A DNA stretch of 62,952 nt, the filler included, from Octopus bimaculoides (lineage: Eukaryota), in NCBI RefSeq assembly GCF_001194135.2. It is 4 parts of 4 records of this genome, joined end to end, with 100 filler letters (N's around TTAATTAATTAA, not from the genome) between each part and the next. Parts side by side here need not be neighbours in the genome. Positions count along the whole stretch, not along the records: positions 1 to 30,980 come from NC_069010.1; 3 more parts are not named here. One strand, given 5' to 3'. The notes below the pieces were generated by a model. The model did no database searches and was not told the DNA's origin. It saw only the letters and a list, made by a program, of their open reading frames with translations. Of this stretch, positions 9,645-30,693 are shown piece after piece; the first letter of the stretch is position 1; each line of letters begins with the position of its first letter. The translations under genes and the position numbers were made by a program.

Positions 9645-10324
9645 NNNNNNNNNNNNNNNNNNNNNNNNNNNNNNNNNNNNNNNNNNNNNNNNNNNNNNNN
9701 NNNNNNNNNNNNNNNNNNNNNNNNNNNNNNNNNNNNNNNNNNNNNNNNNNNNNNNNNNNNNNNNNNNNNNNNNNNNNNNNNNNNNNNNNNNNNNNNNNNN
9801 NNNNNNNNNNNNNNNNNNNNNNNNNNNNNNNNNNNNNNNNNNNNNNNNNNNNNNNNNNNNNNNNNNNNNNNNNNNNNNNNNNNNNNNNNNNNNNNNNNNN
9901 NNNNNNNNNNNNNNNNNNNNNNNNNNNNNNNNNNNNNNNNNNNNNNNNNNNNNNNNNNNNNNNNNNNNNNNNNNNNNNNNNNNNNNNNNNNNNNNNNNNN
10001 NNNNNNNNNNNNNNNNNNNNNNNNNNNNNNNNNNNNNNNNNNNNNNNNNNNNNNNNNNNNNNNNNNNNNNNNNNNNNNNNNNNNNNNNNNNNNNNNNNNN
10101 NNNNNNNNNNNNNNNNNNNNNNNNNNNNNNNNNNNNNNNNNNNNNNNNNNNNNNNNNNNNNNNNNNNNNNNNNNNNNNNNNNNNNNNNNNNNNNNNNNNN
10201 NNNNNNNNNNNNNNNNNNNNNNNNNNNNNNNNNNNNNNNNNNNNNNNNNNNNNNNNNNNNNNNNNNNNNNNNNNNNNNNNNNNNNNNNNNNNNNNNNNNN
10301 NNNNNNNNNNNNNNNNNNNNNNNN

Positions 10325-10505
10325 ACACGTAAAAGCACCCACTACACTCTCTGAGTGGTTGGCGTTAGGAAGGGCATCCAGCTGTAGAAACTCTGCCAAA
10401 TCAGATTGGAGCCTGGTGCAGCCATCTGGTTTCACCAGTCCTCAGTCAAATCGTCCAACCCATGCTAGCATGGAAAGCGGATGTTAAACGATGATGATGA
10501 TGATG
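10325..10505 (+). mobile_element. RTE LINE 3' end fragment
   Basis: Diagnostic 3' UTR block ending in (TGA)n. A similar fragment lies at about 11085-11220. Confidence 0.75.
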
Positions 10506-11698: not shown

Positions 11699-11962
11699 NN
11701 NNNNNNNNNNNNNNNNNNNNNNNNNNNNNNNNNNNNNNNNNNNNNNNNNNNNNNNNNNNNNNNNNNNNNNNNNNNNNNNNNNNNNNNNNNNNNNNNNNNN
11801 NNNNNNNNNNNNNNNNNNNNNNNNNNNNNNNNNNNNNNNNNNNNNNNNNNNNNNNNNNNNNNNNNNNNNNNNNNNNNNNNNNNNNNNNNNNNNNNNNNNN
11901 NNNNNNNNNNNNNNNNNNNNNNNNNNNNNNNNNNNNNNNNNNNNNNNNNNNNNNNNNNNNNN

Positions 11963-12268
11963 AAATCGACCCCAGGACTTATTCTTTGTAAGCCTAGTAC
12001 TTATTCTATCGATCTCTTAATGCCGAACTGCTAAGTTACGGGTACGTAAACACACCACCATCGGTTGTCAAGTGATGTTGGGGACACACACACATATATA
12101 TATATATATACGACAGGCTTCTTTCAGTTTCCGTCTACCAAATCCACTCACAAGGCTTTGGTCGGCCCGAGGCTATAGTGGAAGACACTTGCCCAAGGTG
12201 CCACGCAGTGGGACTGAACCCGGAACCATGTGGTTGGTAAGCAAGCTACTTACCACACAGCCACTCCT
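11963..12268 (-). mobile_element. SINE family B copy
   Basis: Same head/tail blocks as 4003-4454. Further minus copies or fragments at about 13530-13660, 14098-14240, 15655-15860, 16418-17097 and 18325-18480. Confidence 0.8.
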
Positions 12269-13191: not shown

Positions 13192-13626
13192 NNNNNNNNN
13201 NNNNNNNNNNNNNNNNNNNNNNNNNNNNNNNNNNNNNNNNNNNNNNNNNNNNNNNNNNNNNNNNNNNNNNNNNNNNNNNNNNNNNNNNNNNNNNNNNNNN
13301 NNNNNNNNNNNNNNNNNNNNNNNNNNNNNNNNNNNNNNNNNNNNNNNNNNNNNNNNNNNNNNNNNNNNNNNNNNNNNNNNNNNNNNNNNNNNNNNNNNNN
13401 NNNNNNNNNNNNNNNNNNNNNNNNNNNNNNNNNNNNNNNNNNNNNNNNNNNNNNNNNNNNNNNNNNNNNNNNNNNNNNNNNNNNNNNNNNNNNNNNNNNN
13501 NNNNNNNNNNNNNNNNNNNNNNNNNNNNNATCGGTCTCTTTTTGCCGAACCGCTAAGTTACGGGGACCTAAACACACCAGCATCGGTTGTCAAGCGATGT
13601 TGGGGAGGACAAACACAGACACACAA

Positions 13627-13666
<40 letters not shown>

Positions 13667-13667
13667 G

Positions 13668-13889
13668 AAGGCGGCGAGCTGGCAGAAACGTTAGAAAGCC
13701 GGGCGAAATGCTTAGCGGTATTTCGTCTGCCGCTACGTTCTGAGTTCAAATTCCGCCGAGGTCGACTTTGCCTTTCATCCTTTCAGGGTCGATAAATTAA
13801 GTACCAGTTACTCATTGGGGTCGATGTAATCGACTTAACCCCTTGTTTGCCCCTTCTATGTTTAGCCCCTTGTGGGCAATAAAGAAATA

Positions 13890-13890
<1 letters not shown>
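13668..13890 (+). mobile_element. Well-preserved SINE family A copy
   Basis: aaggcggcgagctggcagaaacgttag...gagttcaaattccgccgaggtcgac... Confidence 0.85.
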
Positions 13891-13924
<34 letters not shown>

Positions 13925-14598
13925 CAAATTAAAAGGGTAAAGGATTATCAATTTATTAATTCATTAATAAATCAACAATTAATAATTTTTATCAAGCCCA
14001 TCGGTATGTAAGCACCATTATTGGTGGAGAACTTTAAAAGCTCATATATATTTATAAACATAATTAAGGGATCAGCAAATATTTGCTTCACACATATACG
14101 ACGGGCTTCTTTCAGTTTCCGTCTACCAAATCCACTCACAAGGCTTTGGTCGGCCCGAGGTTATAGTAGAAGACACTTGCCCAAGATATCACGCAGTGGG
14201 AATGAACCCGGAACCATATGGTTGGCAAGCAAGCTACTTTATTTCATAAATATTTGCCATAAAGGCTTAATTTTTTTTTGCTTAATTTTTTTTTTTTTGC
14301 TTAAATTTAATTTTTAATTCACAAAAAGTTTCTGAAAATTCCCTAAAATGAAAAAGTTATGAGGGGTTATACGGTGTGGTATTTAATTTAAATTAAATTT
14401 TTTTTTTCAGAATTGTATGAATTCTCGTGTGAAGAACACAAATTCGCAAAAAAACTTTCCAAAAATTCCAAAAAAATAAATTCTGAGTGGGTGCTTCAAT
14501 CTGAATTCCTGCGGAAAGAAATTTAAACAAGATCCAGTTTTTACAATCAACGTATTACAATTCCTAATTTTACCTACAACATCCGATATCAGATGTAA

Positions 14599-14651: not shown

Positions 14652-14687
14652 ATGTCTCGTTTAATTGTTAAAAACCTACCGAAAAAT
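14652..14687 (+). CDS. RBM19: RBM19 exon 1 (36 nt, MSRLIVKNLPKN)
   Basis: CACC-ATG start context, 12 codons matching the conserved RBM19 start, donor AAT|GTAAGT at 14688, phase 0. Confidence 0.92.
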
Positions 14688-17600
14688 GTAAGTTATTTCT
14701 AAATTTACTCAAATATCAGACTACAACGATGTATAATGGGTTGTTTCCTATAATATTTCTCGTAGTTATTGAGTAAAATAATTCGATATTACTTCTGTTT
14801 ACGGTTTGGGGCTCAAAATCCGTTAGAGTCTGTGTTGATTTTTTTTTTTCCCTAAGGCAGCACACCTACAATTTAGTGTCCCATCTACTTTCGCTAAAAG
14901 TCTATGACGTCATGTGTGTATGTATATATGTATAACATTGTCTTTCATTAGCTCGACAGAATCGAACAGATAGTGCCCAAATTTATTTCATGTTCTATCT
15001 TTTACTTGCTCTACTATGCCGTTATTGTTTACTCCCATGTCTATTCTGATGATCAAAGGTGTTCCAACTTTGATAGTCATGTTTTTTTATTCAGACTTAG
15101 TGTATCTAGGACTACATTATCTAATGTGCCTGTGCTTATTATTATTGTTGTTCAACATTAGGTCAATCCTAAACCAGTACATGTAAAATCAAAGTTATTC
15201 CAGCTGTGATCATCCCATCTTTTATTCAGACAAAGTGTATCTAGGACTACATTATATAATGTGCTCTAGCTTGTTGTTTAGCCCCAGGTCAGTCCTGATC
15301 CAGTAGACATACAACCAGTGACGTTCCAGCTGTGGCCATCCCGTCTTTTATAGTGTATCTAGGACTACATTATCTAATGTGTTTCGCCATATTGTTGTTT
15401 AGCCCTAGGTTATCCTGGTCCAGCAGACTTATAATCAGCAATATTCCAGCTGTAACCTTCCTGTCTATTATTCAGACATAGTTTACCTAGGACTACATTA
15501 TCTAATGTGTCTTATCTTGATATATTGTTGTTTAGCCCCAGGTCGTTCCTGATCCTGTAGACCTATGATCAAAAGCATTCCAGCTGTGAACATCCTACCT
15601 TTTATTCAGACAGTGTATCTAGGACTCCATTATCTATATAGAAATAGATGTGTCTGTGTTTGTCCCTCTTCCACCCCTTGACAACTGGTGTTGGTGTGTT
15701 TACATCCCCATTACTTAGTGGTTTGGCAAATTGAATAAATCAAACCCAGGACTTATTTTTTTGAACCTATTACTTTATCGATCTCTTTTGCCAAACCACT
15801 AGATTACCAGGGACATAAACACACTAACACCAGTTGTTAAGCGGTGGTGGACAAAGACATGCACTCACACACACACACACGTAGATAGATAGATACAGAG
15901 TGTGGTGAATAAACTGTTGTCTAAATCAAGGGTTTTCAAACTGTGGTCCGCAAACCACAGGGGGCCCGTGGACAGCAAATACTTTTTATGGGCAATTTGA
16001 TTTTATATACGTTTTTTAATCGAAATCTTTTCATTGACAATAAACCTATTTGTTAAATACTGTTAAATAAATAAATGTAAAAATATATGTTATTTTAAGC
16101 AAATATTTATGTATAAATTTCATAAGCGTTTATAAGGGGGTCCTTATAAGGTAAAGCCTGAAATATAAAGGAGTCCACAAGTCAAAAAGTTTGAAAACCC
16201 CTGGTCTAAATTATGCAAAAATGAAAATAACACTGACATTTCATTTTAACAGATATATTTACCAAAATTACATAAAAATATCTTGAAATACTAAAGAGGA
16301 AATCTATTCAATAGAATCGCTGTTGGCTTCAAACAATGGCTTCCAGATGACTAGGAAATTTCCTGCGACTCTTCTGAATGCTGCCATAATCCTTGCCTTC
16401 GGTTCATCTTTGGTGTTACTCTCTTTACTCTTTTACTTGTTTCAGTCATTTGACTGCGGCCATGCTGGAGCACTGCCTTTAGTCGAGCAAATCGACCCCA
16501 GGGACTTGATTCTTTGGAAGCCTAGTACTTATTCTATCGGTCTCTTTTTGCCGAACCGGTAAGTGACGGGGACGTAAACACACACCAGCATCGGTTGTCA
16601 AGCAATGTTGGTGGGGCCAAACACAGACACACAAACACACACACACATATATATATATATACACATATATACGACAGGCTTCTTTCAGTTTCCGTCTACC
16701 AAATCCACTCACGAGGCTTTGGTCGGCCCGAGGCTATAGTAGAAGACATTTGCCCAAGATGCCACGCAGTGGGACTGAACCCGGAACCATGTGGTTGATA
16801 AGCAAGCTACTTACCACACAGCCACTCCTGTGCNNNNNNNNNNCAAAGCTTTGGTCGGCCCGAGGCTATAGTAGAAAACACTTGCCCAAGGTGCCACGCA
16901 GTGGGACTGAACCCGGGACCATGTGGTTGGTAAGGAAGCTACTTACCACACAGCCACTCCTACGTCTACCAAATCCACTCACAAGGCTTTGGTCGGCCCG
17001 AGGCTATAGTAGAAGCCACTTGCCCAAGGTGCCACGCAGTGGGACTGAACCCGGGACCATTGTGGTTGGTAAGCAAGCTACTTACCACACAGCCACTTTT
17101 TTTTTGGTCTCTCACTCAACTGCGCCCCCACACATAATAATGAAGGGGTTTGCAGTCTGGGATGTTAGGGGTGATGTGGTTGCAAAAATTGTCTGACAGC
17201 CATGGCTGGGTTCTCCTGCTTGTGTGGCATGGGGGCAGAGTCCTGTTGCCAGACATAGGGCCTTCCATCAGCCACCCTCTTGACTTAGGGCAGCACTACT
17301 TCCTCCAGGTACTTGATGTAGGCCTCCATGTTGAGAAGTGTGAGACCATGTGGGAAGATGAATGGAGGCATAACGTTGCCATCACTAGCGATCACTCCAA
17401 ACACCATGATGTTGACTGGATGTTTGATTTTTACCACTCTCGGTACATGTCCTCAGGTTGACACCCAAACACTCTGAAATGTTTGTATTTTAGTTTCAAT
17501 CATGAATGCCAAGCAGTACAACATGTCGTTTCCAAATTTCTGGCAGAGTGAATTGCAACATGGTGCTGTTTTTTTCACAGACGGTGCCCAGTTAACTCTA

Positions 17601-20600
17601 CTATGCTGTGTAGTTGACAAAATCAAAAACAAATAATGCACATGCGCAAAGTTAAAAATATAAAATGGTAGCAATTTACCCNNNNNNNNNNNNNNNNNNN
17701 NNNNNNNNNNNNNNNNNNNNNNNNNNNNNNNNNNNNNNNNNNNNNNNNNNNNNNNNNNNNNNNNNNNNNNNNNNNNNNNNNNNNNNNNNNNNNNNNNNNN
17801 NNNNNNNNNNNNNNNNNNNNNNNNNNNNNNNNNNNNNNNNNNNNNNNNNNNNNNNNNNNNNNNNNNNNNNNNNNNNNNNNNNNNNNNNNNNNNNNNNNNN
17901 NNNNNNNNNNNNNNNNNNNNNNNNNNNNNNNNNNNNNNNNNNNNNNNNNNNNNNNNNNNNNNNNNNNNNNNNNNNNNNNNNNNNNNNNNNNNNNNNNNNN
18001 NNNNNNNNNNNNNNNNNNNNNNNNNNNNNNNNNNNNNNNNNNNNNNNNNNNNNNNNNNNNNNNNNNNNNNNNNNNNNNNNNNNNNNNNNNNNNNNNNNNN
18101 NNNNNNNNNNNNNNNNNNNNNNNNNNNNNNNNNNNNNNNNNNNNNNNNNNNNNNNNNNNNNNNNNNNNNNNNNNNNNNNNNNNNNNNNNNNNNNNNNNNN
18201 NNNNNNNNNNNNNNNNNNNNNNNNNNNNNNNNNNNNNNNNNNNNNNNNNNNNNNNNNNNNNNNNNNNNNNNNNNNNNNNNNNNNNNNNNNNNNNNNNTAT
18301 ATATGTATGTATGTATGTATACACACACAACAGGATTCTTTTGGTTTCTGTCTACCAAATCTACTCACATGGCTTTGGTCAGCCCAAGACGATAGTAGGA
18401 GACACTTGCACAAGGTGTCACACAGTGGGACTGAACCTGGAACCATGTGGTTGGGAAGGAAGCTTCTTACCACACAGTCAACTTTACCTTTTTTTTAAAA
18501 TCATTCTTAACTTCTGTTTATTCCAGATGACCCAGGAACGTTTACAGGAAATATTCGGGGTCAAAGGTCACATAACCAACTGCAACCTCAAATACACCAA
18601 AGATGGCGTTTTCCGCAAGTTTGCGTTTATTGGATACCGAAATGATGAAGATTGTTCAGCAGCCATCAAATATTTCAGTAAAACTTTTGTTGATACCTCC
18701 AAGATACAGGTAAGGGGAAAAATATCAAAAGGTAGTTGCGATACGGATGCATTGATTGAGATGAATTAGTGTGTCTGTTTGGAAGCGGGTAGTATTGGCT
18801 GGCTGGACATTCAGACATTCAAGCTGTCTTGGTGGCAGTATGTTTTTGGCACTGTAGGCAAGCACATCTGTATACATCATCATCATCATCATCATGCTAG
18901 CATGTGTTGGACGATTTGACTGAGGACTGGTGAAACCAGATGGCTACACCAGGCTCCAATCTGATTTGGCAGAGTTTCTACAGCTGGATGCCCTTCCTAA
19001 ACGCCAACCACTCTGAGAGTGTAGTGGGTGCTTTTACGTGCCACCAGCACAAAGGCCAGTCAGGCGGTTCTGGCAACAGCCACGCTCAAAATAGTGTATT
19101 TTATGTGCCACCCGCACAAGAGCCAGTCCAGGGGCACTGGCAACGATCTCGCTCGAAAGTCCTTACACATGCCGCGGGCATAAGTGCCAGAAAGGCGACG
19201 CTGGGCACAGGTGCCATCACGATTTTGCTTTCGCTTGCCCCGATAAGTCTTCGCAAGCTGAGTTTCATGTCCAATGATACAGATAGATAAATAGAGAGAA
19301 AGAAACATTACACATAAATCCAAGTATAACTAGATGTTCACATGCATAAATCAAGAGAGAGGGAGAGACAGGGTTATTACACATACATACAAACATAACT
19401 GGAGGTTCACAGAGAGAGAGAAAGGGAGAGACACATTAAACATAAACATAACCAGGTGCTAACACATAAACAGAGAGAGAGTGAGGGACATTACATAGAC
19501 ATATAAACATAACTAGTTGTTCACAGAGAGAGAGAGAGAAGCATTATGCCTACATACAAACATAACTAGATAGATAGATAGAGAGAGAGAGAGAGATTAC
19601 ACATGTACAAACATAACTGGATGTTCACTGGGAGGGAACAATATTACACATGCATACAAACTAGATGTTCACACACACAGAAAAGTGAGTGAGAGAGGAA
19701 TAGAGAAAGAGAATGAGACATTACACATGCATACAAACATACCTAGATGCTCATACACAGAGAGAGAGAGAGCATGGGAGAAAGAGATGTTACATATACA
19801 TATGTGGTTGGCAATAGGAAGAGCATTCAGCTGTAGAAACATTGCCTGATCAGATTGGAGCCTGGTGCAGCCTGCTGGCTTGCCAGACCTCGGTCAAACA
19901 ATTCAATCCATACCAGCATGCCGAGCAAACACGCGAACTTACTTCGTCCCGACTTTCAGTTCGTGCCTCACAGCGTTCATATACACATAATTTTTCACGT
20001 CTGGCCGCATAGCCTTTTCCATTTGTTTTCCTGTCTTGTTTTTTGTCCACCACTACATTCCTCCATGGCACAGGTTTAATTTGTGTATACAAATTTAATT
20101 TGCGGTCCATGGGAAGAGCCATTTTAACGATGTGTCCTGCCCAACTCTTCGAAACACCGGTGTTAAAATGGGGATAGCTGATGAAGGAAAATGTTCTTTA
20201 TGTGGCTTGTGTGTTTTCTGTACTCTGGTTATTATTATTTTCTTGTCTACGTTTGGTTTGCAATGTCCTGTACCCAGATATGCACCTATATATACAGGTA
20301 GACGTAGGCATGCACATACCTGTACGTATATATGCATATACTCATTTATTATTTGTTTTATATATATATATATAAACATCGTTAAGGGATCAGCAACAGT
20401 TGCTTCACCACATACCGAAGTTCAGAAATAGCAGCTAAAGTGCTAAAGCTCCAACAGATAGTGCTTGTAGCTCACAAGACTGATTAGTTTCGTTGTTTTT
20501 TTCTTCTTGTTTTGCCTTTGTGAGTTACAAGTACTGTTATCTATTGGAGCTTTAGCACTTTAGCTGCTATTTCTGAACTTCGGTATGTGGTGAAGCAACT

Positions 20601-23600
20601 GTTGCTGATCCCTTAACGATGTTTATAAATTTATAAGAACTTTTAAATAAGTTCTTCACCGATAATGGTGTTTACATATCGAAATGCTTNNNNNNNNNNA
20701 ATATAACAATACATAAAGAAGGGCTAGAGTTGAAGTGCTCAGCATGAGCTAGAATTCATTTTATAGTAAAAATGGATGCATAAGGGGGGAAAACCACAGG
20801 AACAATACCATATGTCAACGCAAGAGATAATATGTGTGTGTGTGTGTTCAATTCCTTCAAGAATCAATAAATAAATTTATAGTTTTCAGTCTCTAAAGTG
20901 TCTAAAAGGTACGGTAAAAAGACAGGCAAATACAAGGATATAAACTTTAGAAATATCATGAATGTTCAAAATATATACATACATTGCTTGTATGTGAAAC
21001 ACGTATATAAATATATATTGTACCTGTATTTCAAAGGGGCCAGTCTTGTCACATTCTGTGTCATGTTGAATCTCTCCGAGAATTACATTAAGGGTACACG
21101 TGTCTGTGGAGTGCTCAGTGGCCAGTCAGGCTCCTGTATTTGTTTATCTTGATCTCTTCTTCATTATGGGCAGCGATACTTGGGTTTTGTGGCCGATGCA
21201 GCGAGGCTGGGGAATGTGTCTGTGATCCATGTTACTTTCCCTCAGTGGAGCATTGAAAGATGAAGATCTGCTTGCGACAGTGAAGAAGGGCAATGATTAT
21301 ATCTGTAACAACTTTCATTTTACCAGGTGGAGCCTGCTTATGACTTAGGGGATGCAAACAGGCCAAGATCCTGGAGTAAATACTCTGCAGAAAGCTCCAA
21401 TTATATTTACAAGGAAAAGAGCAAACCCAAACCGGATCCCGAAAAGAATGAAATGGACAGCAAAAACAAGGTACTTACATCTGTGTGTATCTATCTATCT
21501 ATCTAACTATCTATCTCTCTCTCTCCATCTGTCTATCTCTCTCTCTTACTATCTACCTTTTAAACAAAAAAAAAAAAGCCTGAGGTGACCGTAGGCTTTT
21601 CTCTTCACGGATAAACCTAATCTGTTCCCCCCCCCCCTTTTTTTTTTTTACATTGACTGTGATACTCGATCCCTATTGATCGCCTCCCCCCTTTATTTTA
21701 TTTCATTTTATTTATTTTTTTTTTNNNNNNNNNNNNNNNNNNNNNNNNNNNNNNNNNNNNNNNNNNNNNNNNNNNNNNNNNNNNNNNNNNNNNNNNNNNN
21801 NNNNNNNNNNNNNNNNNNNNNNNNNNNNNNNNNNNNNNNNNNNNNNNNNNNNNNNNNNNNNNNNNNNNNNNNNNNNNNNNNNNNNNNNNNNNNNNNNNNN
21901 NNNNNNNNNNNNNNNNNNNNNNNNNNNNNNNNNNNNNNNNNNNNNNNNNNNNNNNNNNNNNNNNNNNNNNNNNNNNNNNNNNNNNNNNNNNNNNNNNNNN
22001 NNNNNNNNNNNNNNNNNNNNNNNNNNNNNNNNNNNNNNNNNNNNNNNNNNNNNNNNNNNNNNNNNNNNNNNNNNNNNNNNNNNNNNNNNNNNNNNNNNNN
22101 NNNNNNNNNNNNNNNNNNNNNNNNNNNNNNNNNNNNNNNNNNNNNNNNNNNNNNNNNNNNNNNNNNNNNNNNNNNNNNNNNNNNNNNNNNNNNNNNNNNN
22201 NNNNNNNNNNNNNNNNNNNNNNNNNNNNNNNNNNNNNNNNNNNNNNNNNNNNNNNNNNNNNNNNNNNNNNNNNNNNNNNNNNNNNNNNNNNNNNNNNNNN
22301 NNNNNNNNNNNNNNNNNNNNNNNNNNNNNNNNNNNTTTTTTTTTTTTTTTTTTGTTATTCCCATTTGTATTTTATTTATGTGGTGTGCAAGAGAGATGAC
22401 TGCGCTGGTATGGCCATGTGATGCAACATGGATGGAGACGGCTGTGTACAGAAGTGCCGACCTCTAACATGTGGAGGAAACCTGTGGCAGAGGTAGATCC
22501 AGGAAGACATGGGGACAAGGTGGCGAAACATGATCTTCGAATGTTGGGCCTCACAGAGGTGATGGCAGATGACTGAGACCTTTGGTGATGATGCTGTGCT
22601 TGAGAAGACCCATCAAGCCAAGTGCAATCATAGTCGTGGCTGATGCTGGTGCCACATAAGACACCTGTGTCAGTGGCATGTAAAGAGCATACGTTACGCT
22701 CTTGGAGTAGCTTGGTGTTAAGAAGGGGATCCAGACGTAGAAACCATGCCAAATCAGACTGGAACTTGGTGTTCCAGTCAAGCTATCATCCAACCCATAC
22801 CAGCGCGGTAAGCAGAAGCTAAATGATGATAACAATGATGATTTATTTCTAATATACTCAATAAAGGCAATACTAAATTAAAATAGCAATCCATCTACTA
22901 TACTGAATGTATAAATGTATATACAGTGTTGATAGGCCAAATACTACAGTATTTACATTATTTGCATTGGACAGATAGGTGTCTTCATCTTGTTTGTTGT
23001 TACCACAATGTTTCGGCTGATGTACTCTCCAGCCTTCATCAGGTGTCCTGGTGGAATTTTGAACCCAGCCCTTTATTTGACTAATGGGGTAGTTGTAGTA
23101 GTAGTAGTAGTGGGCAGCAATAGTGCACCCAATGCATTTCAGTTTTTTTGGTCCTTTTCAATGACTGAAACTTGTGGCCAGACATTTATTGATACCAGAA
23201 TTCATCTCTTCTGATACTTATTTTGTTTTTAACACAGCTTAACCATTAAGCAAAATAGGCACATACTTACAACATCGAGGGAAGAGTGTGGGGTGGGGCA
23301 CCAAAGAAATGGTAAATGGTTTACAACACAAAAGAAATCACTTTAACCCTTCAGTATTCAGATGTAAAGCTTGTTTATTCATGTTCATCATCATCATCGT
23401 TTAACGTCCGCTTTCCATGCTAGCATGGGTTGGACGATTTGACTGAGGACTGGTGAAAACCAGATGGCTACACCAGGCTCCAATCTGATTTGGCAGAGTT
23501 TCTACAGCTGGATGCCTTTCCTAACGCCAACCACCCAGAGAGTGTAGTGGGTGCTTTTACATGCCACTGGTATGAAGGCCAGTCAGGCGGTACTGGCAAT

Positions 23601-24349
23601 GGCCACGCCTTTGAATTTATCCTGCGTTATCTTGTAGCCTTCAGATTTCAATGATGAGATTGTTTATTTTTGGACTGACACTGTAGGGTAGGTATGAAAA
23701 GCTGGATCTAGCTTGTTTGAGACCATAAAACAGGTAGAATATTTTATCTAAATATGGCTGGCTTAAATGCTAAAGGGTTAAACTTGCTAAAATAATGATA
23801 GTGGTGTTGATGTTTGTGATGATGATGATAGTTATTATTATGGAGATGATGGTGATGATGATGATGATAAACCAGACAAGAGATTATGTCTATCATTAAT
23901 TATTTAGTCATTTACCTTTTCGTTCTTTCTGTTTTTATTCAGCTTTATGAGAATTCTGAGTTTTTGGAATTCCTGGAAGCGCACAAGTTGTCTGGAAAAG
24001 GGGCCAAGAATATGTGGAGCAACGACACAATAGAATTCCTTAAGAAGTCATTTGATTCACAGAACAAGAACAAAGGAACCAATGAACCGTCTGAGGTTGT
24101 CTTTGATGATTCTGGCAATGAATCTGCAGATGATAAATACGAAACCATGGCTAAAAATAGTAAGCCTCTTCCTTTCATATTTCATGTCTGCAAACAAATC
24201 ACTTTTCTTAGTTTTCTTCTTCTATATAGGCACAAGTATGGCATGGCACTTTGAGCAACCTTTTTCTACTATCGTCTCAGGTTAACAAAGGAATTGTATA
24301 TGGACATGGTTGAAAGAAAGTGAAGAGGCTTTTTGTGTGTGTGTATGTG

Positions 24350-24392
<43 letters not shown>

Positions 24393-26838
24393 ATATTATT
24401 CTTTTACTTGTTTCAATCATTTGACTGCAGCCATGCATGAACACTGCCTTTAGTCGAACAAATCAACCCCAGGACTTATTCTTTGTAAGCCGAGTACTTA
24501 TTCAATTGGTCTCTTTTGCTGAACCGCTAAGTTATGGAGAAGTAAATGCACCAACATCAGCTGTCAAGTGATAGTGGTGGGGACAAACACAGACACACAA
24601 ATACATACATGTATATATGTATATATATATTTTATTATATGTATTTATTTTCTCCTAATTAATAAATAACTCGGACAAAATAAATTGGTTAATATTCGGT
24701 TAAAATGTCTTACGTTTAAGCTGGTTCCCATGCATTTCCCTGAAGAGAAGATTACATTTTTAACATCGCCGATTCCTATGGAAGGTATAATTTGTAATCT
24801 TTGAAACATATGTCGGAATAAAAGTATGCAGTTAACATGCGTTTTACTCCATTCATTAAAAATATATGTATATATATATATATATATGACGAGCTTCTTT
24901 CAGTTTCCGTCTACCAAAATCACTCACAAGGCTTTGGTCAACCCAAGGCTATAATAGAAAACACTTGCCATGCAGTAGGACTGAACCCGGAACCATGTGG
25001 TTGGGAATCAAGTTTCTGAAACTTTTCTATTAAACAGACAACTGTCAGGTCATCAACAGTTCGTGTTGGTAGAAGTTTGCTGTGAGCCTTTGATGTAGAG
25101 TGTTGAGTCTCGTGTAATAGTAATAATAGAGCATTGTGTATATACTTTCATCCCACCTGCTTTGTTATATTATATATCCAATACAAGGATATAAAAGTAT
25201 ATTTGTTTTTTATGATCCAGCATGTAAAAAGCACCCAGCATACTCTGTAGGGTGGTTGGCATTAGGAAGGGCATCCACCTGTAGAAACCATACCACAACA
25301 GACAACTGGAGTTTGGACAGCTCCATGTCAAACTGCCCAACCCATGCCAGCATGGAAAACAGATGTTAAATGATGATGATGATGATGATGATCCAAACAC
25401 TAGCTTAATAAAAAAAAATTATTTTACTAAATCCTGCCAAATCTGGATTATTTTAAAAATTAATAAACACACAGGCACAGGAGTGGCTGTGTGGTCAGGG
25501 TTCAGTCCCACTGCGTGGCATCTTGGGCAAGTGTCTTCTACTATAGCCTCGGGCCGACCAAAGCCTTGTGAGCAGATTTGGTAGACGGAAACTGAAAGAA
25601 GCCCGTCGTATATATGTATATATATGTATATGTGTGTGTCTGTGTTTGTCCCCCTAGCATTGCTTGATGACCGATGCTGGTGTGTTTATGTCCCCGTCAC
25701 TTAGCGGTTCGGCAAAAAGAGACCGATAGAATAAGTACTAGGCTTACGAAGAATAAGTCCCAGAGTCGATTTGCTCGACTAAAGGCGGTGCTCNNNNNNN
25801 NNNGGCACTTTTTCGCGCAGCTATTCTCATCCATTCTCCCCACATGTCCATACCAGCACAATCGTCTCTCTTGCACCCCACAACTGATGCTTCTTAGGTT
25901 CAACTTTTCTCTCAAGATACTTACAGTCCGTCAGGTATGCACAAAAAGACAACACCAAGAGATCCCCTTGAGAATAAAATGACAGAAGATCCTAAGGTGA
26001 TGTTAATGTTATTATTTGATGTTGTTGCTTAGCCCCTGATTTGCCCCGATTCAATAAATCTATGATCATAGGGCCCACACTACTATGAGCCATTAAGACC
26101 CAGCAGTACTTGAGATGGGAGAAGGGTCACCTGGTGATTTATAGTTGTTGAGGTACTTTCTGAATGTGAATAGGAGGTTAGCTTCTTCACTGCTTATTTG
26201 TAGGATTTTCGAGCGAGATCGTTGCCAGTGCCCCTGGACTGGCTCTTGTGCGGGTGACACATAAAATACACCATTTTGAGCGTGGCTGTTGCCAGTACCC
26301 CCTGACTGGCCTTTGTGCGGGTGACACGTAAAAACACTCACTACACTCTCTGAGTGGTTGGCGTTAGGAAGGGCATCCAGCTGTAGAAACTCTGCCAAAT
26401 CAGATTGGAGCCTGGTGTAGCCATCTAGTTTCACCAGTCCTCAGTCAAATCGTCCAACCCATGCTAGCATGGAAAGCGGACGTTAAACGATGATGATGAG
26501 ATGCAAGCATGGCTTTGTATTGGCACAGATGTGGCTGTGTGGTTAAGAAGTTCACTTCCCAACCACATCGTTTCAGGTTCAGTCCCACTGCAGAGGACTG
26601 AATATACACACACACATAGGAAAGGGTGCTGAAAAGTTCCTGGCTTTGAGTGAAAGAAAACACAGGAGGCTCAGTTAATTACGATTTTATTGAAGATATT
26701 CCCCTCTCAGATTCACACACATATTGCAGCGGTCCTTCAGTTTCTCTAAGCTCTGTAAAAGAACTCAGAAGTTTAGGCCTCCAACCAGGCCTTTTGCGAT
26801 ACCCTTAAGGCCAGGAACCTTTCAGCACCTCCTCGCGC

Positions 26839-26872
<34 letters not shown>

Positions 26873-27579
26873 TTATATATAGGCGCAGGAGTAGCTGTGT
26901 GGTAAGAAGCTTGCTTTCCAACCACATGGTTCTGAGTTCAGTCCCACTGCATGGCACCTTGGGCAAATGTCATCTATTATAGCTTCAGAGAAAGAGAGAG
27001 ACAGACAGACAGAAAACGGTGAAGGGAGAGAAAAAGGGAATTAGAGAAGGATGGAGGAAGAAAACAGTAAAGAGTAGAGTCGCATCAAAAAGGTTGAGAT
27101 AAACTTACTTAGAAATGGATGTGTGGCGTTCAATTAAATAATTATATAAATAATATCTCTCTCCCTTTCTCTTTTTCTCTCTCTTGTTGCTCACACGTGA
27201 CCATCATCCATCTTTCTTTTCCTGCATGGATGTTCAAAGGACTGGACGTTTTCTTTCTGTTTTCAAAGAAAATATTTCTCTCAGTGTTCACTATTTTCCT
27301 CTCGTTCTGGCCTAATGACCCTCCATGTTTGTTTTCATTCGGTTTCCTTGTATGTCTCCACTGTTCTGTTTTTGTTCCCAGCTTTCACGCTCCATAAATC
27401 CTAAATTTTATTTTAGAATTTATGGGAGCAACTGTCTTTGAAGACTCATATTGTTGTTGAATGCTCGAAATGAGGAGTAGATAGACGGCCGACAATGGAT
27501 GAAAAGTTGTTCTCTGTTTACTTGTTTGTTTTCATATTTCATGTTGCTTATACAGTTGGTGACGTCCTGTACCCATGTA

Positions 27580-27614: not shown

Positions 27615-30597
27615 ACTATTATTATTTAATTGAATGCCATGCATCCATTTCCAAGTATATATATATATATACACAACAGGCTCCGATGTGGTTTCTGTGT
27701 ATTAAATTTGGTCACAAAGCATTGGTCAGCTGGTCGGTCTGGGACTAATAGGAGACACTTGCCCAAGATGCCCTGTGGTAAACTTGAAACTGCGTAGTCA
27801 CAAAGCTGATTTCTTGTAGGTATATACCATTCATATCTCTAAAAATGACACATTTTAATGCCCATAATCATTTGTGTTTTCTTTTTTTATTTCTATTATT
27901 TCACAGCCTGAAACCCAACCAGTAAGATACTCCGTTCGAATGAAGGGCCTCACTGGTCGATATCACTCTGTAAGTATACATTAGTCTTTTTTGTAATGAT
28001 ATTGTGCTGTTTTTGTGGGGTACGTCTCGGGGACAGCAGAGTGACTGCCAAAAGAGTAAAGGAGTGACTGGACATTCCATGTAGCATCACAAATTTTGTC
28101 ACATAAGATGATTTCTCGGTGGTCATGTGGCATGCACTGATCCTTTCCAATGTTGGGTAGCCTGGTTTCTTCTGATCAGTGTTGTAACAAATTGAAAGTT
28201 CTTCTGGGCTGGTTGTTGATTCTCCACAGAATCATCAGATGATGGGGCTGCCATCCTGGTGTTGAGCCAATGTTCTGTGGGTCTCCATTAACTTGGAATC
28301 TCACCAGGAGACAGGCCAGCCTAGAGGGTACCCTACAAGAAGCAAAGCTCCAGATGGTATTGCTCTCTTGGATTTATGGAACACATGGTGTTGAGCTGAT
28401 GTACCATGGGTCACCATTAGTCTGGAACCTCTACTGGGATACCGGCTCACTTAGGAGGTACCCCACCAGAAGCAAAGTCCCAGATGGTATTGCTTTCAGA
28501 TTTATGGAACACATGGTGTTGAGCCAACACAACGTGGGTCACTGTTAATCTGGAACTACTAGGAGCAAAGCTGCAGATGGCATTGACCTTTTGGGTCTTC
28601 AGAACATACAAGCCCCCTTGCCACAACAAGGCCAGAACCATGGATGACCCCAACCTCATCAAGCAAGAGCATGAAGCAACGAAAGCAATCTAGGACTGTC
28701 AAGGTTTCTAGGGGATGGCCATAGGTGAAGTATGGCTTGGTGGTTAAGAAGTTTATTTCCTAATCCCATGGTTCTGGGTTCAGTTGCACTGTATGTATGA
28801 CACTTTTGCCAAGTGTCTTCTACCATAACACTTGCCTGACCAAATCCCTGTGAGTGAATTTGGTAGACAGAAACTGAAAGAAGCCTGTTGTGTATATATA
28901 TATATATTTAAGTCACAGTATATAGATTCAAGTAATCTGGCAGTACTCAGTAAAAAAGCTCCTTAATGTATCATTCTACAAACCATATACAATATATAGT
29001 AAGAACCAGGCTTTACAAAAATGTAATAAGTGCCAGGGTTGATTTGTTCTACTAAAATTCTTCAAAGTGGTGGCCCAGAATGGCCACAGTCTAATGACTG
29101 AAACAAGTAAAACGATTAAGAAAATATGTGTGTGAGAGTCTGTGTATACACAAACATATACATTCTGCAAAGACTATTTTCCTAGATGTCTACAGAGAAC
29201 GAGTGGAGATGAAGAGATGAACCAGATATATTTTGGCAAATGCATCTTCCTATTTTAGAGTCTTTTTTTTTTTTTTTGGTGGTGGGTAGGGGACATTTAC
29301 ACATTTTGTCAATCCCAGAGTACTGCTGAAGAATACCTTTTTTTTTTTGAAATTTCAGGACACTATAAAGGAGTTCTTCTACCCCATCAAAGTGAAACAA
29401 GTCCACATACCCCGTGGTCTCAATCACAGACAGTTTGGTGAGTAAACAGTTTGGGATAAACCAGTTTATGTTGGTGTTGTTGGTGTTCAGGGTCGGGAAG
29501 GTGGCGTGGCTGAGGTTGATGGTGGTAGTGATGTTGGTGATGATGAAGGTGGTGGTGGTGGTGGTGGTATTGTAGAATAAGAAGCAGCAGCAGCAGCATT
29601 GGTTACAGTGGCTAAGTGATCAAGAAGTTTGCTTTGTAGCCACAAGTTCCCAGGTTCAGTTCCACTGTGTGCATCTGAAACAATGTGTCTTTTACATTAA
29701 GCCCCAAATCAATCAAATCTCGTCAGTGAAACCAAACTGTTTGAGTGGATTATAGTTGTAATTCAAGAAGCACAGCTTTGTCACTCCATAAGTCATGCTA
29801 ATCCTCTCTAAGAGTGTGTCTGTGGAATACTCAGCCAGGTTAACCATAAATTTCAAGAAGCAAGTTATTGAGTTGATTGGTTGCAAAATTGAATGTTAGT
29901 CATTGAAATCAAAGGAGGGACCCCCCCTCTATACTTTCGTATAATAATCCTTTCTACTATAGGTACGGGGCCTGAAATTTTACGGGAGGGGGTTTAGTTG
30001 TGTGGTACTTATTTCATTGGTGGAGGCGCAATGGCCCAGTGGTTAGGGCAGCGGACTCGCGGTCATAGGATCATGGTTTCGATTCCCGGACCGGGCATTG
30101 TGAGTGTTTATTGAGCAAAAACACATAAAAATCCACGAGGCTCTGGCAGGGGATGGTGGCGAACCCTGCTGTACTCTTTCACCACAACTTTCTCTCACTC
30201 TTACTTCCTGTTTCTGTTGTACCTGTAATTCAAAGGGTCAGCCTTGTCACACTGTGTCACGCTGAATATCCCCCCCGAGAACTACGTTAAGGGTACACGT
30301 GTCTCTGGAGTGCTCAGCCACTTGCACGTTAATTTCACGAGCAGGCTGTTCCGTTGATCGGATCAACTGGAACCCTCGACGTCGTAAGCGACGGAGTGCC
30401 AAAAAAAAAACTTATTTCATTGACTCCGAAAGGATGAAAGGCAAAGTCGACCTCAGTGAACTTTGCACTGTACAAAGGAAGCAGGGAGCCAAATGAAATA
30501 AAATCTGTCTGTCTGTCTGTTTCAGGTATTGTGTTTGCTGAATTCTTTAATCCTGAAGATGTAAAATTGGCCATGGAGAAACAAGGGAAGTTTATCA
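14652..30597 (+). CDS. RBM19: RBM19/MRD1 orthologue, 5' partial multi-exon gene (7 exons found, RRM1 and most of RRM2; 3' part missing after the spacer at 30981)
   Basis: Exons with canonical GT-AG boundaries, spliced by eye, give MSRLIVKNLPKN-MTQERLQEIF...KDGVFRKFAFIGY...FVDTSKIQ-VEPAYDLGDANRPRSWSKY...-LYENSEFLEFLEAH...MWSND...-YSVRMKGL...-DTIKEFFYPIK...-GIVFAEF. This matches the recalled RBM19/Mrd1 N-terminus (MSRLIVKNLP, KDGKFRKFGFIGF, KPRAWSK, EFQEFL, TWAND). Confidence 0.93.
15040..15635. repeat. Degenerate tandem array, 5 units of about 118-135 bp, in RBM19 intron 1
   Basis: Core CTAGGACT(A/C)CATTAT starts at 15106, 15241, 15359, 15487 and 15619. Confidence 0.85.
15927..16203. mobile_element. 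hAT-type MITE, 277 bp
   Basis: TIRs caagggttttcaaac / gtttgaaaacccctg, flanked by an 8-bp TSD GTCTAAAT (15919-15926 and 16204-16211). Confidence 0.85.
17103..17681 (-). mobile_element. Internally deleted Tc1/mariner (DD37D/maT-like) transposon
   Basis: Minus strand KHPVNIMVFGVIASDG.VMPPFIFPHG...RPYVWQQDSAP...HYYVWGAVE with stops and frameshifts. Its 5' end matches the start of the 58.57-kb copy. Confidence 0.85.
18527..18709 (+). CDS. RBM19: RBM19 exon 2 (RRM1 core, 61 codons)
   Basis: Acceptor TTCCAG| after a pyrimidine tract, RNP1-like RKFAFIGY, donor CAG|GTAAGG, phase 0/0. Confidence 0.95.
18879..19278 (-). mobile_element. RTE LINE 3' UTR fragment (long variant with duplicated hairpin module)
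   Basis: Same block as 3306-3760 and 26205-26500. Confidence 0.75.
19290..19800. repeat. Degenerate minisatellite (about 55-65 bp units) in RBM19 intron 2
   Basis: Recurrent acataactagatgttcac...(GA)n...ttacacat units. Confidence 0.75.
20371..20627. repeat. Perfect 84-bp inverted repeat in RBM19 intron 2
   Basis: 20371-20454 is the exact reverse complement of 20544-20627. About 25 bp of further imperfect pairing lies inside the arms. Confidence 0.95.
21327..21470 (+). CDS. RBM19: RBM19 exon 3 (VEPAYDLGDANRPRSWSKYSAESS...DSKNK, 48 codons)
   Basis: Acceptor TTTACCAG|, open frame with the conserved RPRSWSKY motif, donor AAG|GTACTT, phase 0/0. Missed by the ORF track. Confidence 0.9.
22372..22840 (+). 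mobile_element. RTE LINE 3' fragment (ORF2 C-terminus + 3' UTR), degenerate
   Basis: GVQER..RWYGHV...CGRGRSRKTW...KHDLRMLGLTE...LEKTHQAK, then the 3' UTR block and (TGA)n tail. Confidence 0.8.
23002..23048 (-). ncRNA. Degenerate minimal type-I hammerhead ribozyme motif (family 1), antisense in RBM19 intron 3
   Basis: Minus strand gacac-CTGATGA-a-ggctg(gagagtacat)cagcc-GAAA-catt-gtgg. Homologous to 49106-49153. Confidence 0.55.
23343..23781. mobile_element. TTAA-flanked (piggyBac-like) MITE with a nested RTE 3' fragment (about 23386-23609)
   Basis: Ends TTAACCCTTcagtatt / aatgctaAAGGGTTAA, interrupted by a (CAT)n-tailed RTE piece. Confidence 0.7.
23943..24159 (+). CDS. RBM19: RBM19 exon 4 (LYENSEFLEFLEAHK...MWSND...MAKN)
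   Basis: Acceptor TTTTATTCAG|, conserved EFLEFL and WSND motifs, donor A|GTAAGC (phase 1). Confidence 0.88.
24395..25010 (-). mobile_element. SINE family B copy split by a hammerhead-bearing insert in its microsatellite
   Basis: Tail half at 24395-24600 and head half at 24885-25010, with foreign sequence between them. Confidence 0.75.
24729..24831 (+). ncRNA. Type-I hammerhead ribozyme motif (family 2), sense strand of RBM19 intron 4
   Basis: ttcc-CTGAAGA(24740)-gaagattaca...tgtaatcttt-GAAA(24803)-C-atat-GTC(24812-24814)-ggaa. Stem I TTCC/GGAA extended by TGCAT/ATGCA. Confidence 0.75.
25478..25793 (+). mobile_element. SINE family B copy
   Basis: Head, microsatellite and tail blocks. Further plus copies or fragments at about 26881-26985 and 28725-29110. 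Confidence 0.8.
25805..25942 (-). pseudogene. RTE LINE ORF2 fragment
   Basis: Minus strand LREKLNLRSISCGVQERRLCWYGHVGRMDE, matching the RTE RL.WYGHV.RM motif. Confidence 0.75.
26205..26500 (+). mobile_element. RTE LINE 3' UTR fragment
   Basis: Diagnostic block ending in (TGA)n. Confidence 0.75.
26617..26835. mobile_element. Mariner-derived MITE, second copy at about 33873-34100
   Basis: Inverted ends ggtgctgaaaagttcctggc / gccaggaacctttcagcacc, and a homologous internal sequence at 33.9 kb. Confidence 0.7.
27907..27969 (+). CDS. RBM19: RBM19 exon 5 (PETQPVRYSVRMKGLTGRYHS, RRM2 RNP2)
   Basis: Long pyrimidine tract + CACAG|, RNP2-like VRMKGL, donor TCT|GTAAGT. The 5' phase does not match exon 4 (see findings). 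Confidence 0.8.
28258..28600. repeat. Tandem array, about 2.7 units of 128-129 bp, in RBM19 intron 5
   Basis: ggtgttgagc at 28258, 28387 and 28515, with agcaaag..cagatgg.attg recurring in each unit. Confidence 0.85.
29359..29437 (+). CDS. RBM19: RBM19 exon 6 (DTIKEFFYPIKVKQVHIPRGLNHRQF-G)
   Basis: Acceptor TTTCAG|, IKEFF.P motif typical of RBM19 RRM2, donor G|GTGAGT, phase 0/1, in frame with exons 5 and 7. Confidence 0.88.
30022..30409 (+). mobile_element. Full-length SINE family C with A-tail and 13-bp TSD, nested in a minus-strand SINE family A
   Basis: TSD ACTTATTTCATTG at 30007-30019 and 30410-30422. Family A halves lie at about 29945-30020 and 30410-30470. Confidence 0.9.
30526..30597 (+). 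CDS. RBM19: RBM19 exon 7 (G-IVFAEFFNPEDVKLAMEKQGKFI, RRM2 RNP1)
   Basis: Acceptor TGTTTCAG|, RNP1-like GIVFAEF, donor A|GTGAGT, phase 1/1. Confidence 0.88.
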
Positions 30598-30693
30598 GTG
30601 AGTTGAACCCTTCACTTTGTCAGTTACTGTTCTGTTATCTTGCTTTCATTATCATCGTACCATTCTCTTTCCCCTATCCCTCTTTCTCCCCCC

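What the first reader, a model, noticed from the sequence alone, without database searches (positions are those of the whole stretch)
24729..24831. Near-canonical hammerhead ribozyme in the sense strand of RBM19 intron 4
Seen: core CUGAAGA, a 10-bp stem II (gaagattaca/tgtaatcttt), GAAA, helix III AC-AUAU-GU (self-complementary ACAUAUGU), a GUC cleavage triplet, and stem I UUCC/GGAA with a distal UGCAU/AUGCA extension. The only core defect is G10.1-U11.1 instead of G-C; the 60.2-kb copy has G-C. Inference: the RBM19 pre-mRNA could self-cleave in this intron, affecting co-transcriptional splicing or yield of an essential ribosome-biogenesis gene. The G-U change could be attenuating or simple decay.
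Basis: partly seen in the sequence, partly recalled or inferred. Interest (0 to 1): 0.7.

Follow-up and report, generated by a model that had tools for sequence, protein, structure and literature searches.

The report
Solitary hammerhead-like motif in an intron
A sequence with every conserved core base of a hammerhead self-cleaving RNA does sit in an intron of an RBM19-like gene, but it lies inside a small piece of DNA inserted into a repeat, folds poorly on its own and is most likely an ordinary, weak or dead relic of a mobile element, not a regulator of the gene.

Summary
The motif is a type I hammerhead on the + strand with predicted cleavage after C24814. My descriptor scan finds it as the only perfect-core hit in 30,980 bases; chance expectation is 0.018 per piece for the loosest form and under 1e-4 with a stem II this long. 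Rfam does not call it at gathering. A search of 24722-24838 alone returns only Hammerhead_1, at 15.9 bits against a threshold of 34.

- Helix III is 2 bp plus an AUAU loop. The ACAUAUGU palindrome makes a full helix only between two copies.
- Stem II carries a 36-nt loop.
- Position 10.1-11.1 is G-U.
- With native flanks the three-helix fold is 1e-5 to 2e-4 of the ensemble, because a hairpin at 24815-24850 takes one strand of stem I.
- No partner copy lies in the piece.

The motif sits in a ~222-bp, 30% GC insertion in the TA microsatellite of an antisense SINE, 570 nt into the intron after the fourth coding exon.

Best reading: a solitary, dimer-type hammerhead from a retroelement of the Penelope-like or retrozyme kind, with little or no activity. 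No related copy could be retrieved, so family membership is untested. Interest is low.

The parts
24632..24853 (+). About 222-bp AT-rich insertion (30% GC) that carries the motif. Its boundaries are blurred by the microsatellite. A 9-bp direct repeat, TATATGTAT, at about 24637 and 24854 could be a target duplication, but it is not significant.
   Evidence: Alignment A1: three other SINE copies run straight through the (CA)n/(TA)n tract where this locus has the extra DNA.
24731..24739 (+). Stem I, 5' strand: distal UGCAU (24731-24735) and proximal UUCC (24736-24739).
   Evidence: Pair probability is about 0.5 in the isolated 103 nt and <=0.014 with native flanks.
24740..24746 (+). Core C3-A9: CUGAAGA.
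   Evidence: Aligned to the Hammerhead_1 consensus.
24747..24802 (+). Stem II: 10 bp (24747-24756 with 24793-24802), closed by a G10.1-U11.1 wobble. The 36-nt loop (24757-24792) contains an inner hairpin, UUCC-UAU-GGAA.
   Evidence: Pair probabilities are about 0.64-1.0 across all contexts tested, with the closing G-U pair the weakest. Rfam treats it as a 52-nt insertion.
24803..24806 (+). Core G12 A13 A14 A15.1: GAAA.
24806..24813 (+). Helix III: A15.1-U16.1 and C15.2-G16.2 with an AUAU loop. This is the palindrome ACAUAUGU, which forms an 8-bp helix only between two copies.
   Evidence: Monomer pair probability is 0.02-0.06. Two copies cofold into a double hammerhead at -41.6 kcal/mol, against 2 x -17.0 for monomers.
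24812..24814 (+). GUC triplet. The predicted scissile bond is between C24814 and G24815.
24815..24830 (+). Stem I, 3' strand: GGAA (24815-24818), a 7-nt bulge UAAAAGU (24819-24825), and AUGCA (24826-24830).
24815..24850 (+). Competing hairpin that sequesters the 3' strand of stem I.
   Evidence: Energy is -9.6 kcal/mol and pair probabilities are 0.72-0.92. It is present in the MFE structure of every longer context.
24396..24631 (-). 3' part of the host SINE, antisense to the gene, ending in its internal (CA)n/(TA)n microsatellite.
   Evidence: 80-84% identical to copies at 4022-4262, 16425-16661 and 25609-25793.
24854..25012 (-). The rest of the microsatellite and the 5' part of the same SINE.
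   Evidence: 81-85% identical to 4266-4426, 12094-12245 and 16647-16806.
23943..24159 (+). Fourth coding exon of the RBM19-like gene. The acceptor is cag| and the donor |gtaagc starts at 24160, so the motif starts 570 nt into the intron.

Best explanation
The motif is a solitary copy of a retroelement-borne type I hammerhead of the dimer-dependent kind found in Penelope-like elements (PLEs) and animal non-LTR retrozymes.

Shown:
- The core bases, the three helices and the GUC site are present.
- The motif lies in an insertion of about 222 bp that landed in the TA-rich microsatellite of an older SINE.
- That SINE sits antisense in the intron after the fourth coding exon of an RBM19-like gene.

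Inferred: in its source element, two copies on one multimeric transcript would pair their ACAUAUGU palindromes into an 8-bp helix III and cut each other.

In the pre-mRNA the copy is alone and handicapped. Helix III is 2 bp. No loop is placed for stem I-stem II contacts. The 10.1-11.1 pair is G-U. A downstream hairpin competes for stem I. It is therefore expected to cleave very slowly or not at all, and to be neutral for RBM19 expression.
For: - Complete core, and the only perfect-core hit in the piece. Chance expectation is <=1e-4 per 31 kb at this stem II length.
- Hammerhead_1 is the only one of 4227 Rfam families matched on 24722-24838. The match covers the full model with the same core assignment.
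- The architecture fits published animal motifs. These have a helix III of 1-2 bp capped by a 2-4 nt palindromic loop. PLE variants have a long helix II (7-8 bp) and a short helix I (4-5 bp) (PMC4209133). Invertebrate motifs have a 2-bp helix III plus a tetraloop, and retrozyme units are a few hundred bp with low GC (PMC7229834).
- Two copies are predicted to fold into exactly the double hammerhead.
- The motif is inside an insertion in a TA microsatellite. PLEs are reported to favour microsatellite and (TA)n targets, and cephalopods carry old PLE remnants (PMC8557442).
- The monomer fold is disfavoured: 1% of the ensemble when isolated, and 1e-5 to 2e-4 with native flanks.
- Single min-hammerheads showed no detectable cleavage in vitro.
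Against: - No second copy of the insertion, or of any similar motif, is in the 31 kb.
- No reverse transcriptase or endonuclease reading frame was evident by eye among the translated open frames; no domain search was run.
- No tandem array is present.
- No relative could be retrieved from any collection, so membership of a repeat family is unproven.
- The 36-nt loop in stem II, the missing unpaired base between A9 and 10.1, and G-U in place of the highly conserved G10.1-C11.1 are atypical of PLE hammerheads.
- The insertion is not unusually structured (z +0.57 and +0.10), unlike retrozyme RNAs.
- Its short A5 end and possible 9-bp flanking repeat would equally fit LINE-type retroposition.
- The Rfam score is well below gathering.
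Confidence: 0.55

Rival explanations
1. Chance look-alike. An AT-rich insertion with a fortuitous 10-bp hairpin happens to be flanked by CUGAAGA and GAAAC, and a microsatellite-like ACATATGT follows. It never was a ribozyme.
For: - Rfam finds nothing at gathering or in the 801-base search. The best score is 15.9 bits against 34.
- The hammerhead fold is not the MFE structure, and the region is no more stable than shuffles (z -0.53).
- No homologue or second copy was found anywhere.
- ACATATGT-type strings are common here because of the (TATATG)n microsatellites.
- Extrapolating one search gives about one or two motifs of this quality per 2-3 Gb genome by chance. With many windows scanned, one would eventually turn up.
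- Relaxed scans give chance-level weak hits elsewhere.
Against: - All 11 fixed core positions are right, and so are the commonest natural choices that my descriptor did not demand: C15.2-G16.2, C17 and a palindromic loop 3.
- Expectation per 31-kb piece is <=1e-4.
- The motif sits in an inserted, hence probably mobile, segment in the kind of target PLEs prefer.
- The dimer fold comes out as the cofold MFE structure.
Confidence: 0.27
2. One reading: a working, possibly attenuated, intronic ribozyme that cuts the RBM19 pre-mRNA co-transcriptionally and tunes splicing or yield. This would be analogous to the conserved intronic hammerheads of amniotes.
For: - The motif is on the sense strand, 570 nt into the intron, with a complete core.
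- Conserved intronic hammerheads derived from retroelements are known in the RECK, CTCL and DTNB genes (PMC6155905).
- Just after transcription of 24831, before the competitor hairpin emerges, stem I has a pair probability of about 0.5.
Against: - Helix III pair probability is 0.02-0.06.
- The full fold is <=2e-4 of the ensemble in native context.
- There is no loop-loop contact geometry, 10.1-11.1 is G-U, and no dimer partner is present.
- Minimal hammerheads without tertiary contacts are nearly inactive at cellular Mg2+. This rests on established knowledge (De la Pena 2003; Khvorova 2003, as cited).
- The motif lies in a secondary insertion in a SINE, so it is a recent passenger.
- Vertebrate retrozymes are reported to be depleted from introns (bioRxiv 10.64898/2026.07.22.740005).
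- No conservation data are available.
Confidence: 0.07
3. The 3' end of a 5'-truncated non-PLE retroposon, such as a LINE 3' UTR or a small SINE, in which the hammerhead-like motif has no role in the element's life cycle.
For: - The insertion ends in AAAAA.
- It is flanked by a possible 9-bp direct repeat, TATATGTAT.
- No PLE reading frame was evident among the translated open frames.
Against: - The flanking repeat is not significant inside a microsatellite: 52 of 500 shuffles score as well.
- This reading does not explain the complete hammerhead core.
- As far as I know, hammerheads have not been described in LINE 3' ends. Their known carriers are PLEs, Terminons and retrozymes.
Confidence: 0.08

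Closest known systems
Minimal or atypical type I hammerheads of Penelope-like elements (Cervera & de la Pena 2014, PMC4209133; Lunse, Weinberg & Breaker 2017)
   Same: - Complete core.
- Long helix II and short helix I (4 bp).
- Tiny palindromic helix III and loop 3 that makes a full helix only in a dimer.
- Expected low activity as a single copy.
- Target in an AT-rich or microsatellite sequence.
   Different: - No unpaired base between A9 and 10.1.
- G-U instead of the highly conserved G10.1-C11.1.
- A 36-nt loop on helix II.
- No flanking pLTR or RT-EN reading frame.
- No second copy within 31 kb.
Animal non-LTR retrozymes (Cervera & de la Pena 2020, PMC7229834)
   Same: - Type I hammerhead whose helix III is 2 bp plus a tetraloop.
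- Low-GC unit of about 200-300 bp.
   Different: - A single unit, not a tandem array.
- Helix II is 10 bp, not about 4 bp, with no recognisable loop 1-loop 2 contacts.
- The RNA is not predicted to be highly self-paired (z +0.57).
Conserved intronic hammerheads of amniotes (HH9 in RECK, HH10 in CTCL; Rfam RF02275 and RF02277)
   Same: A sense-strand hammerhead in an intron of a protein-coding gene, thought to derive from retroelement ribozymes.
   Different: - Those are canonical, fast and deeply conserved.
- Here there is no Rfam match to those families and no conservation evidence.
- The predicted fold is poor.
Newt satellite 2 and avocado sunblotch viroid double hammerheads (Forster et al. 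1988)
   Same: Helix III is too weak in a monomer, and two copies pair to make an extended helix III. The cofold prediction reproduces this.
   Different: Those occur as tandem multimers on one transcript. This one is alone.
Naiad PLEs with 'HHR_half_core' (Craig et al. 2021, PMC8557442)
   Same: - (TA)n insertion bias.
- Core halves CUGANGA and GAAA separated by an unusually long spacer (35-50 nt reported; 56 nt here).
- Old remnants reported in cephalopods.
   Different: This is only a lead.

Membership tests
Hammerhead ribozyme, type I (Rfam RF00163) | Conserved core C3 U4 G5 A6 N7 G8 A9, G12 A13 A14, A15.1-U16.1, and H17 at the cleavage site. | tested here: met
   CUGAAGA at 24740-24746, GAAA at 24803-24806, U24813 and C24814.
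Hammerhead ribozyme, type I (Rfam RF00163) | Three helices radiating from the core, open at helix I. | tested here: met
   Helix I is 4 + 5 bp, helix II is 10 bp and helix III is 2 bp with a 4-nt loop. Helix III is marginal, with pair probability 0.02-0.06.
Hammerhead ribozyme, type I (Rfam RF00163) | G10.1-C11.1 closing pair of helix II. | tested here: not met
   G24747-U24802 is a wobble pair.
Hammerhead ribozyme, type I (Rfam RF00163) | Covariance-model score at or above the curated gathering threshold of 34 bits. | tested here: not met
   No hit in the whole-window gathering search or in the 801-base E<=10 search. The score is 15.9 bits, E 0.2, when only 117 bases are searched.
Hammerhead ribozyme, type I (Rfam RF00163) | Loop 1 or bulge to loop 2 tertiary contacts that give activity at cellular Mg2+. 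| not testable with these tools
   The geometry looks unfavourable: a 10-bp helix II with a 36-nt loop faces a bulge after the fourth pair of helix I. No 3D modelling was available.
Hammerhead ribozyme, type I (Rfam RF00163) | Site-specific self-cleavage. | not testable with these tools
   This needs in vitro transcription or RNA end mapping.
Hammerhead ribozyme, type I (Rfam RF00163) | Helices supported by compensatory changes among homologues. | not testable with these tools
   No homologue was retrievable.
PLE-associated min-hammerhead | Located in the pseudo-LTR flanking an RT/GIY-YIG reading frame, usually with another copy nearby (<50 kb). | tested here: not met
   No RT/EN-like frame was evident by eye in the translated open frames of the piece; no domain search was run. 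No second motif was found. A 5'-truncated solo insertion would also look like this.
PLE-associated min-hammerhead | Long helix II, short helix I, and palindromic 15.2-16.2 and loop 3. | tested here: met
   Helix II is 10 bp, helix I is 4 bp and the palindrome is ACAUAUGU.
PLE-associated min-hammerhead | Unpaired nucleotide between A9 and G10.1. | tested here: not met
   Helix II starts directly after A9. Shifting the register breaks the helix (direct reading).
Animal non-LTR retrozyme | Tandem repeats of 170-400 bp, each with a type I hammerhead. | tested here: not met
   TRF finds no array at the locus, and self-BLAST finds a single copy.
Animal non-LTR retrozyme | Unit RNA predicted to be highly self-paired. 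| tested here: not met
   MFE is -31.7 kcal/mol for 204 nt, z +0.57.
Amniote intronic hammerheads HH9/HH10 | Match to RF02275 or RF02277, and deep conservation at the orthologous intron. | tested here: not met
   No Rfam match. Conservation could not be tested.

The most novel reading that the evidence does not exclude
An invertebrate, probably cephalopod, has kept a retroelement-derived hammerhead in the sense strand of an intron of the essential ribosome-biogenesis gene RBM19. There it would act as a slow, G-U-attenuated or protein- or dimer-assisted self-cleaver that modulates splicing or transcript yield. That would be the first exapted intronic hammerhead outside vertebrates.
Probability: 0.04. 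Interest if true: 0.6.

Novelty: new member of a known kind. Interest (0 to 1): 0.2.

Why it matters
If it is what it seems, it adds one more dispersed, retroelement-derived hammerhead motif to the very many already catalogued in animal genomes. That is useful for repeat annotation of this genome and little else.

It would matter only under two conditions. The copy would have to be conserved at the orthologous intron, and it would have to cleave in vivo. It would then extend the idea of domesticated intronic ribozymes, known from amniote RECK, CTCL and DTNB, to an invertebrate and to an essential nucleolar gene.

The case also shows a limit of motif matching. A perfect catalytic core does not imply an active ribozyme when helix III, the tertiary contacts and the folding context are poor.

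Tried and rejected
- Rfam at gathering over the whole piece gave nothing. The E<=10 search on 24400-25200 gave only microsatellite-driven pseudo-miRNA hits and no ribozyme. Only a 117-base search surfaced Hammerhead_1, below threshold.
- I tried to find other copies through translated open frames across the element, the exon ORF and a SINE ORF. All three protein searches came back empty, so the protein collection holds nothing from this organism.
- A metagenome scan with a pattern of the core plus the base of stem II gave three unrelated chance matches without hammerhead structure.
- Scans of genome contigs and viral contigs with element and SINE patterns found nothing.
- Full-text searches for the element and SINE sequences, and for 'hammerhead ribozyme' with RBM19, found nothing.
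- I rejected the idea that the insertion is slightly more than one unit of a circular or tandem element. There are no terminal repeats beyond the microsatellite.
- I rejected a rod-like retrozyme or viroid-like fold (z +0.57 and +0.10).
- I rejected a PLE-style register with a bulged base after A9, because it breaks stem II.
- ARAGORN finds no tRNA-like head in the SINEs.
- The supplement with Naiad PLE consensus sequences is not held.
Full report
**Observation.**
- Distal stem I: UGCAU 24731-24735 pairs with AUGCA 24826-24830.
- Stem I: UUCC 24736-24739 pairs with GGAA 24815-24818. A 7-nt bulge (24819-24825) lies on the 3' strand.
- Core: CUGAAGA 24740-24746.
- Stem II: a 10-bp helix, 24747-24756 with 24793-24802. 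It is closed by a G-U wobble at 10.1-11.1 and capped by a 36-nt loop that contains a small inner hairpin.
- GAAA 24803-24806, the palindrome ACAUAUGU 24806-24813, and GUC 24812-24814.
- The predicted scissile bond is 24814/24815.
- This is the topology of a type I hammerhead, open at helix I.

**Is it more than chance?**
- I wrote a descriptor requiring stem I >=4 bp, CUGANGA, stem II >=4 bp with a loop up to about 70 nt, GAAA, helix III >=2 bp, UH, and G-U pairs allowed.
- It hits this site and nothing else on either strand of 1-30980.
- In 400 Mb of first-order Markov sequence with the window's composition, the loosest form occurs 0.29 times per Mb per strand. That is 0.018 per 31-kb piece.
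- With stem II >=8 bp there was 1 hit, and with >=9 bp there were none.
- The motif is therefore very unlikely for one window.
- Extrapolation gives roughly one or two such motifs per 2-3 Gb genome, so on its own it is not significant genome-wide.
- Allowing one core mismatch and a bulge gives four more weak hits with stem II of 4-5 bp. That is about the chance level, and none resembles this one.

**Rfam.**
- The whole piece gives no family at gathering score.
- An E<=10 search of 24400-25200 gives only microsatellite-driven pseudo-miRNA hits.
- A search of 24722-24838 alone returns one family of 4227: Hammerhead_1 (RF00163), at 24734-24819 on the + strand.
- That match scores 15.9 bits against a gathering score of 34, E 0.2. 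It covers the full model with the same core assignment and a 52-nt insertion where the model expects about 10.

**Gene context.**
- Exon 1 is 14652-14687 and reads MSRLIVKNLPKN, with donor gtaagt.
- Exon 2 is 18527-18709 and encodes RRM1 (E 2e-17).
- Exon 3 starts at 21327.
- Exon 4 is 23943-24159 (LYENSEFLEFLEAHK...), with donor gtaagc at 24160.
- An RRM RNP1-type exon follows at 30527-30598.
- The PDB search confirms an RRM domain but does not single out RBM19.
- 'Sense strand of RBM19 intron 4' is therefore reasonable. The motif begins 570 nt into that intron.

**Local context.**
- This is the most informative result. The sequence on both sides of the motif is one SINE, antisense to the gene. 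Its 3' part is 24396-24631 and its 5' part is 24854-25012.
- Other copies of this SINE, at 4006-4440, 16409-16820 and 25480-25800 (reverse complement), run uninterrupted through an internal (CA)n/(TA)n microsatellite.
- At exactly that point this locus has an extra ~222 bp, 24632-24853, with 30% GC.
- The hammerhead motif therefore arrived with a secondary insertion into a TA microsatellite.
- The insertion has no other copy in the piece and no terminal repeat beyond the microsatellite.
- It is not in a tandem array.
- No reverse transcriptase or endonuclease reading frame is evident nearby among the translated open frames, though no domain search was run on them.
- It is not unusually structured (z +0.57 and +0.10).

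**Folding.**
- The MFE structure of the bare 103 nt (-17.0 kcal/mol, z -0.53) is not the hammerhead. It keeps stem II but pairs CUGA with UCGG.
- The best hammerhead-compatible structure is -14.9 kcal/mol.
- Stem II forms with probability of about 0.64-1.0 in every context tested; the closing G-U pair is the weakest and the inner pairs are about 1.0.
- Helix III forms with probability 0.02-0.06.
- Stem I forms with probability about 0.5 in isolation and <=0.014 once 20-30 nt of native 3' flank are present.
- The cause is a hairpin at 24815-24850 (-9.6 kcal/mol, pair probabilities 0.72-0.92) that takes the 3' strand of stem I.
- The complete three-helix fold is about 1% of the ensemble for the isolated RNA and 1e-5 to 2e-4 in native context.
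- By contrast, two copies are predicted to cofold into a double hammerhead with an 8-bp helix III, at -41.6 kcal/mol against 2 x -17.0.

**Comparison with known hammerheads.**
- Most animal hammerheads are type I, with a helix III of 1-2 bp capped by a 2-4 nt palindromic loop. This blocks efficient cleavage by a single copy but allows it in dimers (PMC4209133).
- Penelope-like element variants have a long helix II (7-8 bp), a short helix I (4-5 bp), a highly conserved G10.1-C11.1 pair and an unpaired base after A9. They have low activity in vitro, and single motifs show none that is detectable (PMC4209133).
- Invertebrate motifs typically have a 2-bp helix III plus a tetraloop. They sit in low-GC units of a few hundred bp, the non-LTR retrozymes (PMC7229834).
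- PLEs favour microsatellite and (TA)n targets. Some Naiad PLEs carry the two core halves 35-50 nt apart. Cephalopods hold old PLE remnants (PMC8557442).
- Retrozymes are proposed to be non-autonomous PLE derivatives and are depleted from introns in vertebrates (bioRxiv 10.64898/2026.07.22.740005).
- Conserved intronic hammerheads exist in amniote RECK, CTCL and DTNB (PMC6155905).
- The present motif shares the palindromic mini helix III, the long helix II, the short helix I, the low-GC small unit and the TA target.
- It fails on G10.1-C11.1, on the unpaired base after A9, on tandem or paired arrangement, and on the Rfam threshold.

**Explanation and likelihoods.**
- Most likely (about 0.55): a solitary, probably decaying copy of a retroelement-borne, dimer-dependent hammerhead, carried into the intron by an insertion into the SINE's microsatellite. 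It would have little or no cleavage activity as a lone copy and no role in RBM19 expression.
- A chance look-alike (about 0.27) cannot be excluded. No relative could be retrieved, and a genome of this size should hold one or two such motifs by chance.
- A non-PLE retroposon fragment (about 0.08) is suggested only by a short A-run and a non-significant flanking repeat.

**Limits.**
- The SINE recalls cephalopod (octopus) repeats to me, but that is memory, not a test. Text searches for the sequence found nothing.
- None of the collections holds DNA or proteins from this organism.
- Copy number, covariation and orthologous-site presence are the decisive tests, and none could be run.

Noticed in passing
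window 4006-4440, 8200-8790, 11960-12250, 13530-14235, 16409-16820, 18300-18470, 24396-25012, 25480-25800, 26550-26960, 28740-29110: One SINE family of about 400 bp, with an internal (CA)n/(TA)n microsatellite, fills much of the piece in both orientations. Copies are 72-85% identical. ARAGORN sees no tRNA-like head. It recalls cephalopod SINEs to me, but the organism was not verified.
   Followed up: partly
window 16693-17097: A tandem triplication with a 132-bp period (83% matches) of the SINE's 5' part, directly after a full SINE copy. A 10-N gap lies inside it at 16834-16843.
   Followed up: no
window 3386-3750, 9584-9640 and 10325-10441, 18934-19290, 23457-23651, 25213-25365, 26096-26440: A second interspersed repeat family, recognisable from recurring translations such as GLVKPDGYTRLQSDLAEFLQLDALPNANHSESVVGAFTC and NQMARPGSNLIWQSFY. 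It occurs in both orientations and was not classified.
   Followed up: no
window 14652-14687, 18527-18709, 21327-?, 23943-24159, 30527-30598: Coding exons of an RBM19/Mrd1-like gene on the + strand. They run from the start codon (MSRLIVKNLPKN) through RRM1 and the linker, and include a later RRM RNP1 exon (GIVFAEFFNPEDVKLAMEKQGKFI). The introns are 2-6 kb and packed with repeats.
   Followed up: partly
window 24815-24850: A 13-bp imperfect hairpin, GGAAUAAAAGUAUGC...GCAUGCGUUUUACUCC, immediately after the predicted cleavage site and still inside the insertion. It competes with stem I. Whether it is part of the source element's design, as an alternative fold, is unknown.
   Followed up: partly
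window 24643-24685: A near-palindromic AT-rich hairpin at the 5' end of the insertion, with arms ATTTATTTTCTCC and CGGACAAAATAAAT. Rfam reports it as a sub-threshold mir-4520-like hairpin on both strands (E 0.41 and 3.7), which is almost certainly meaningless.
   Followed up: no
window 6413-6512, 8546-8581, 9645-10324, 11699-11962, 13192-13529, 17682-18297, 21725-22335, 25794-25803 and others: There are ten runs of N (assembly gaps), some inside repeats. The piece comes from a draft assembly, so a further copy of the element could be hidden in a gap. The nearest gap is 25794-25803, about 960 bp downstream.
   Followed up: no
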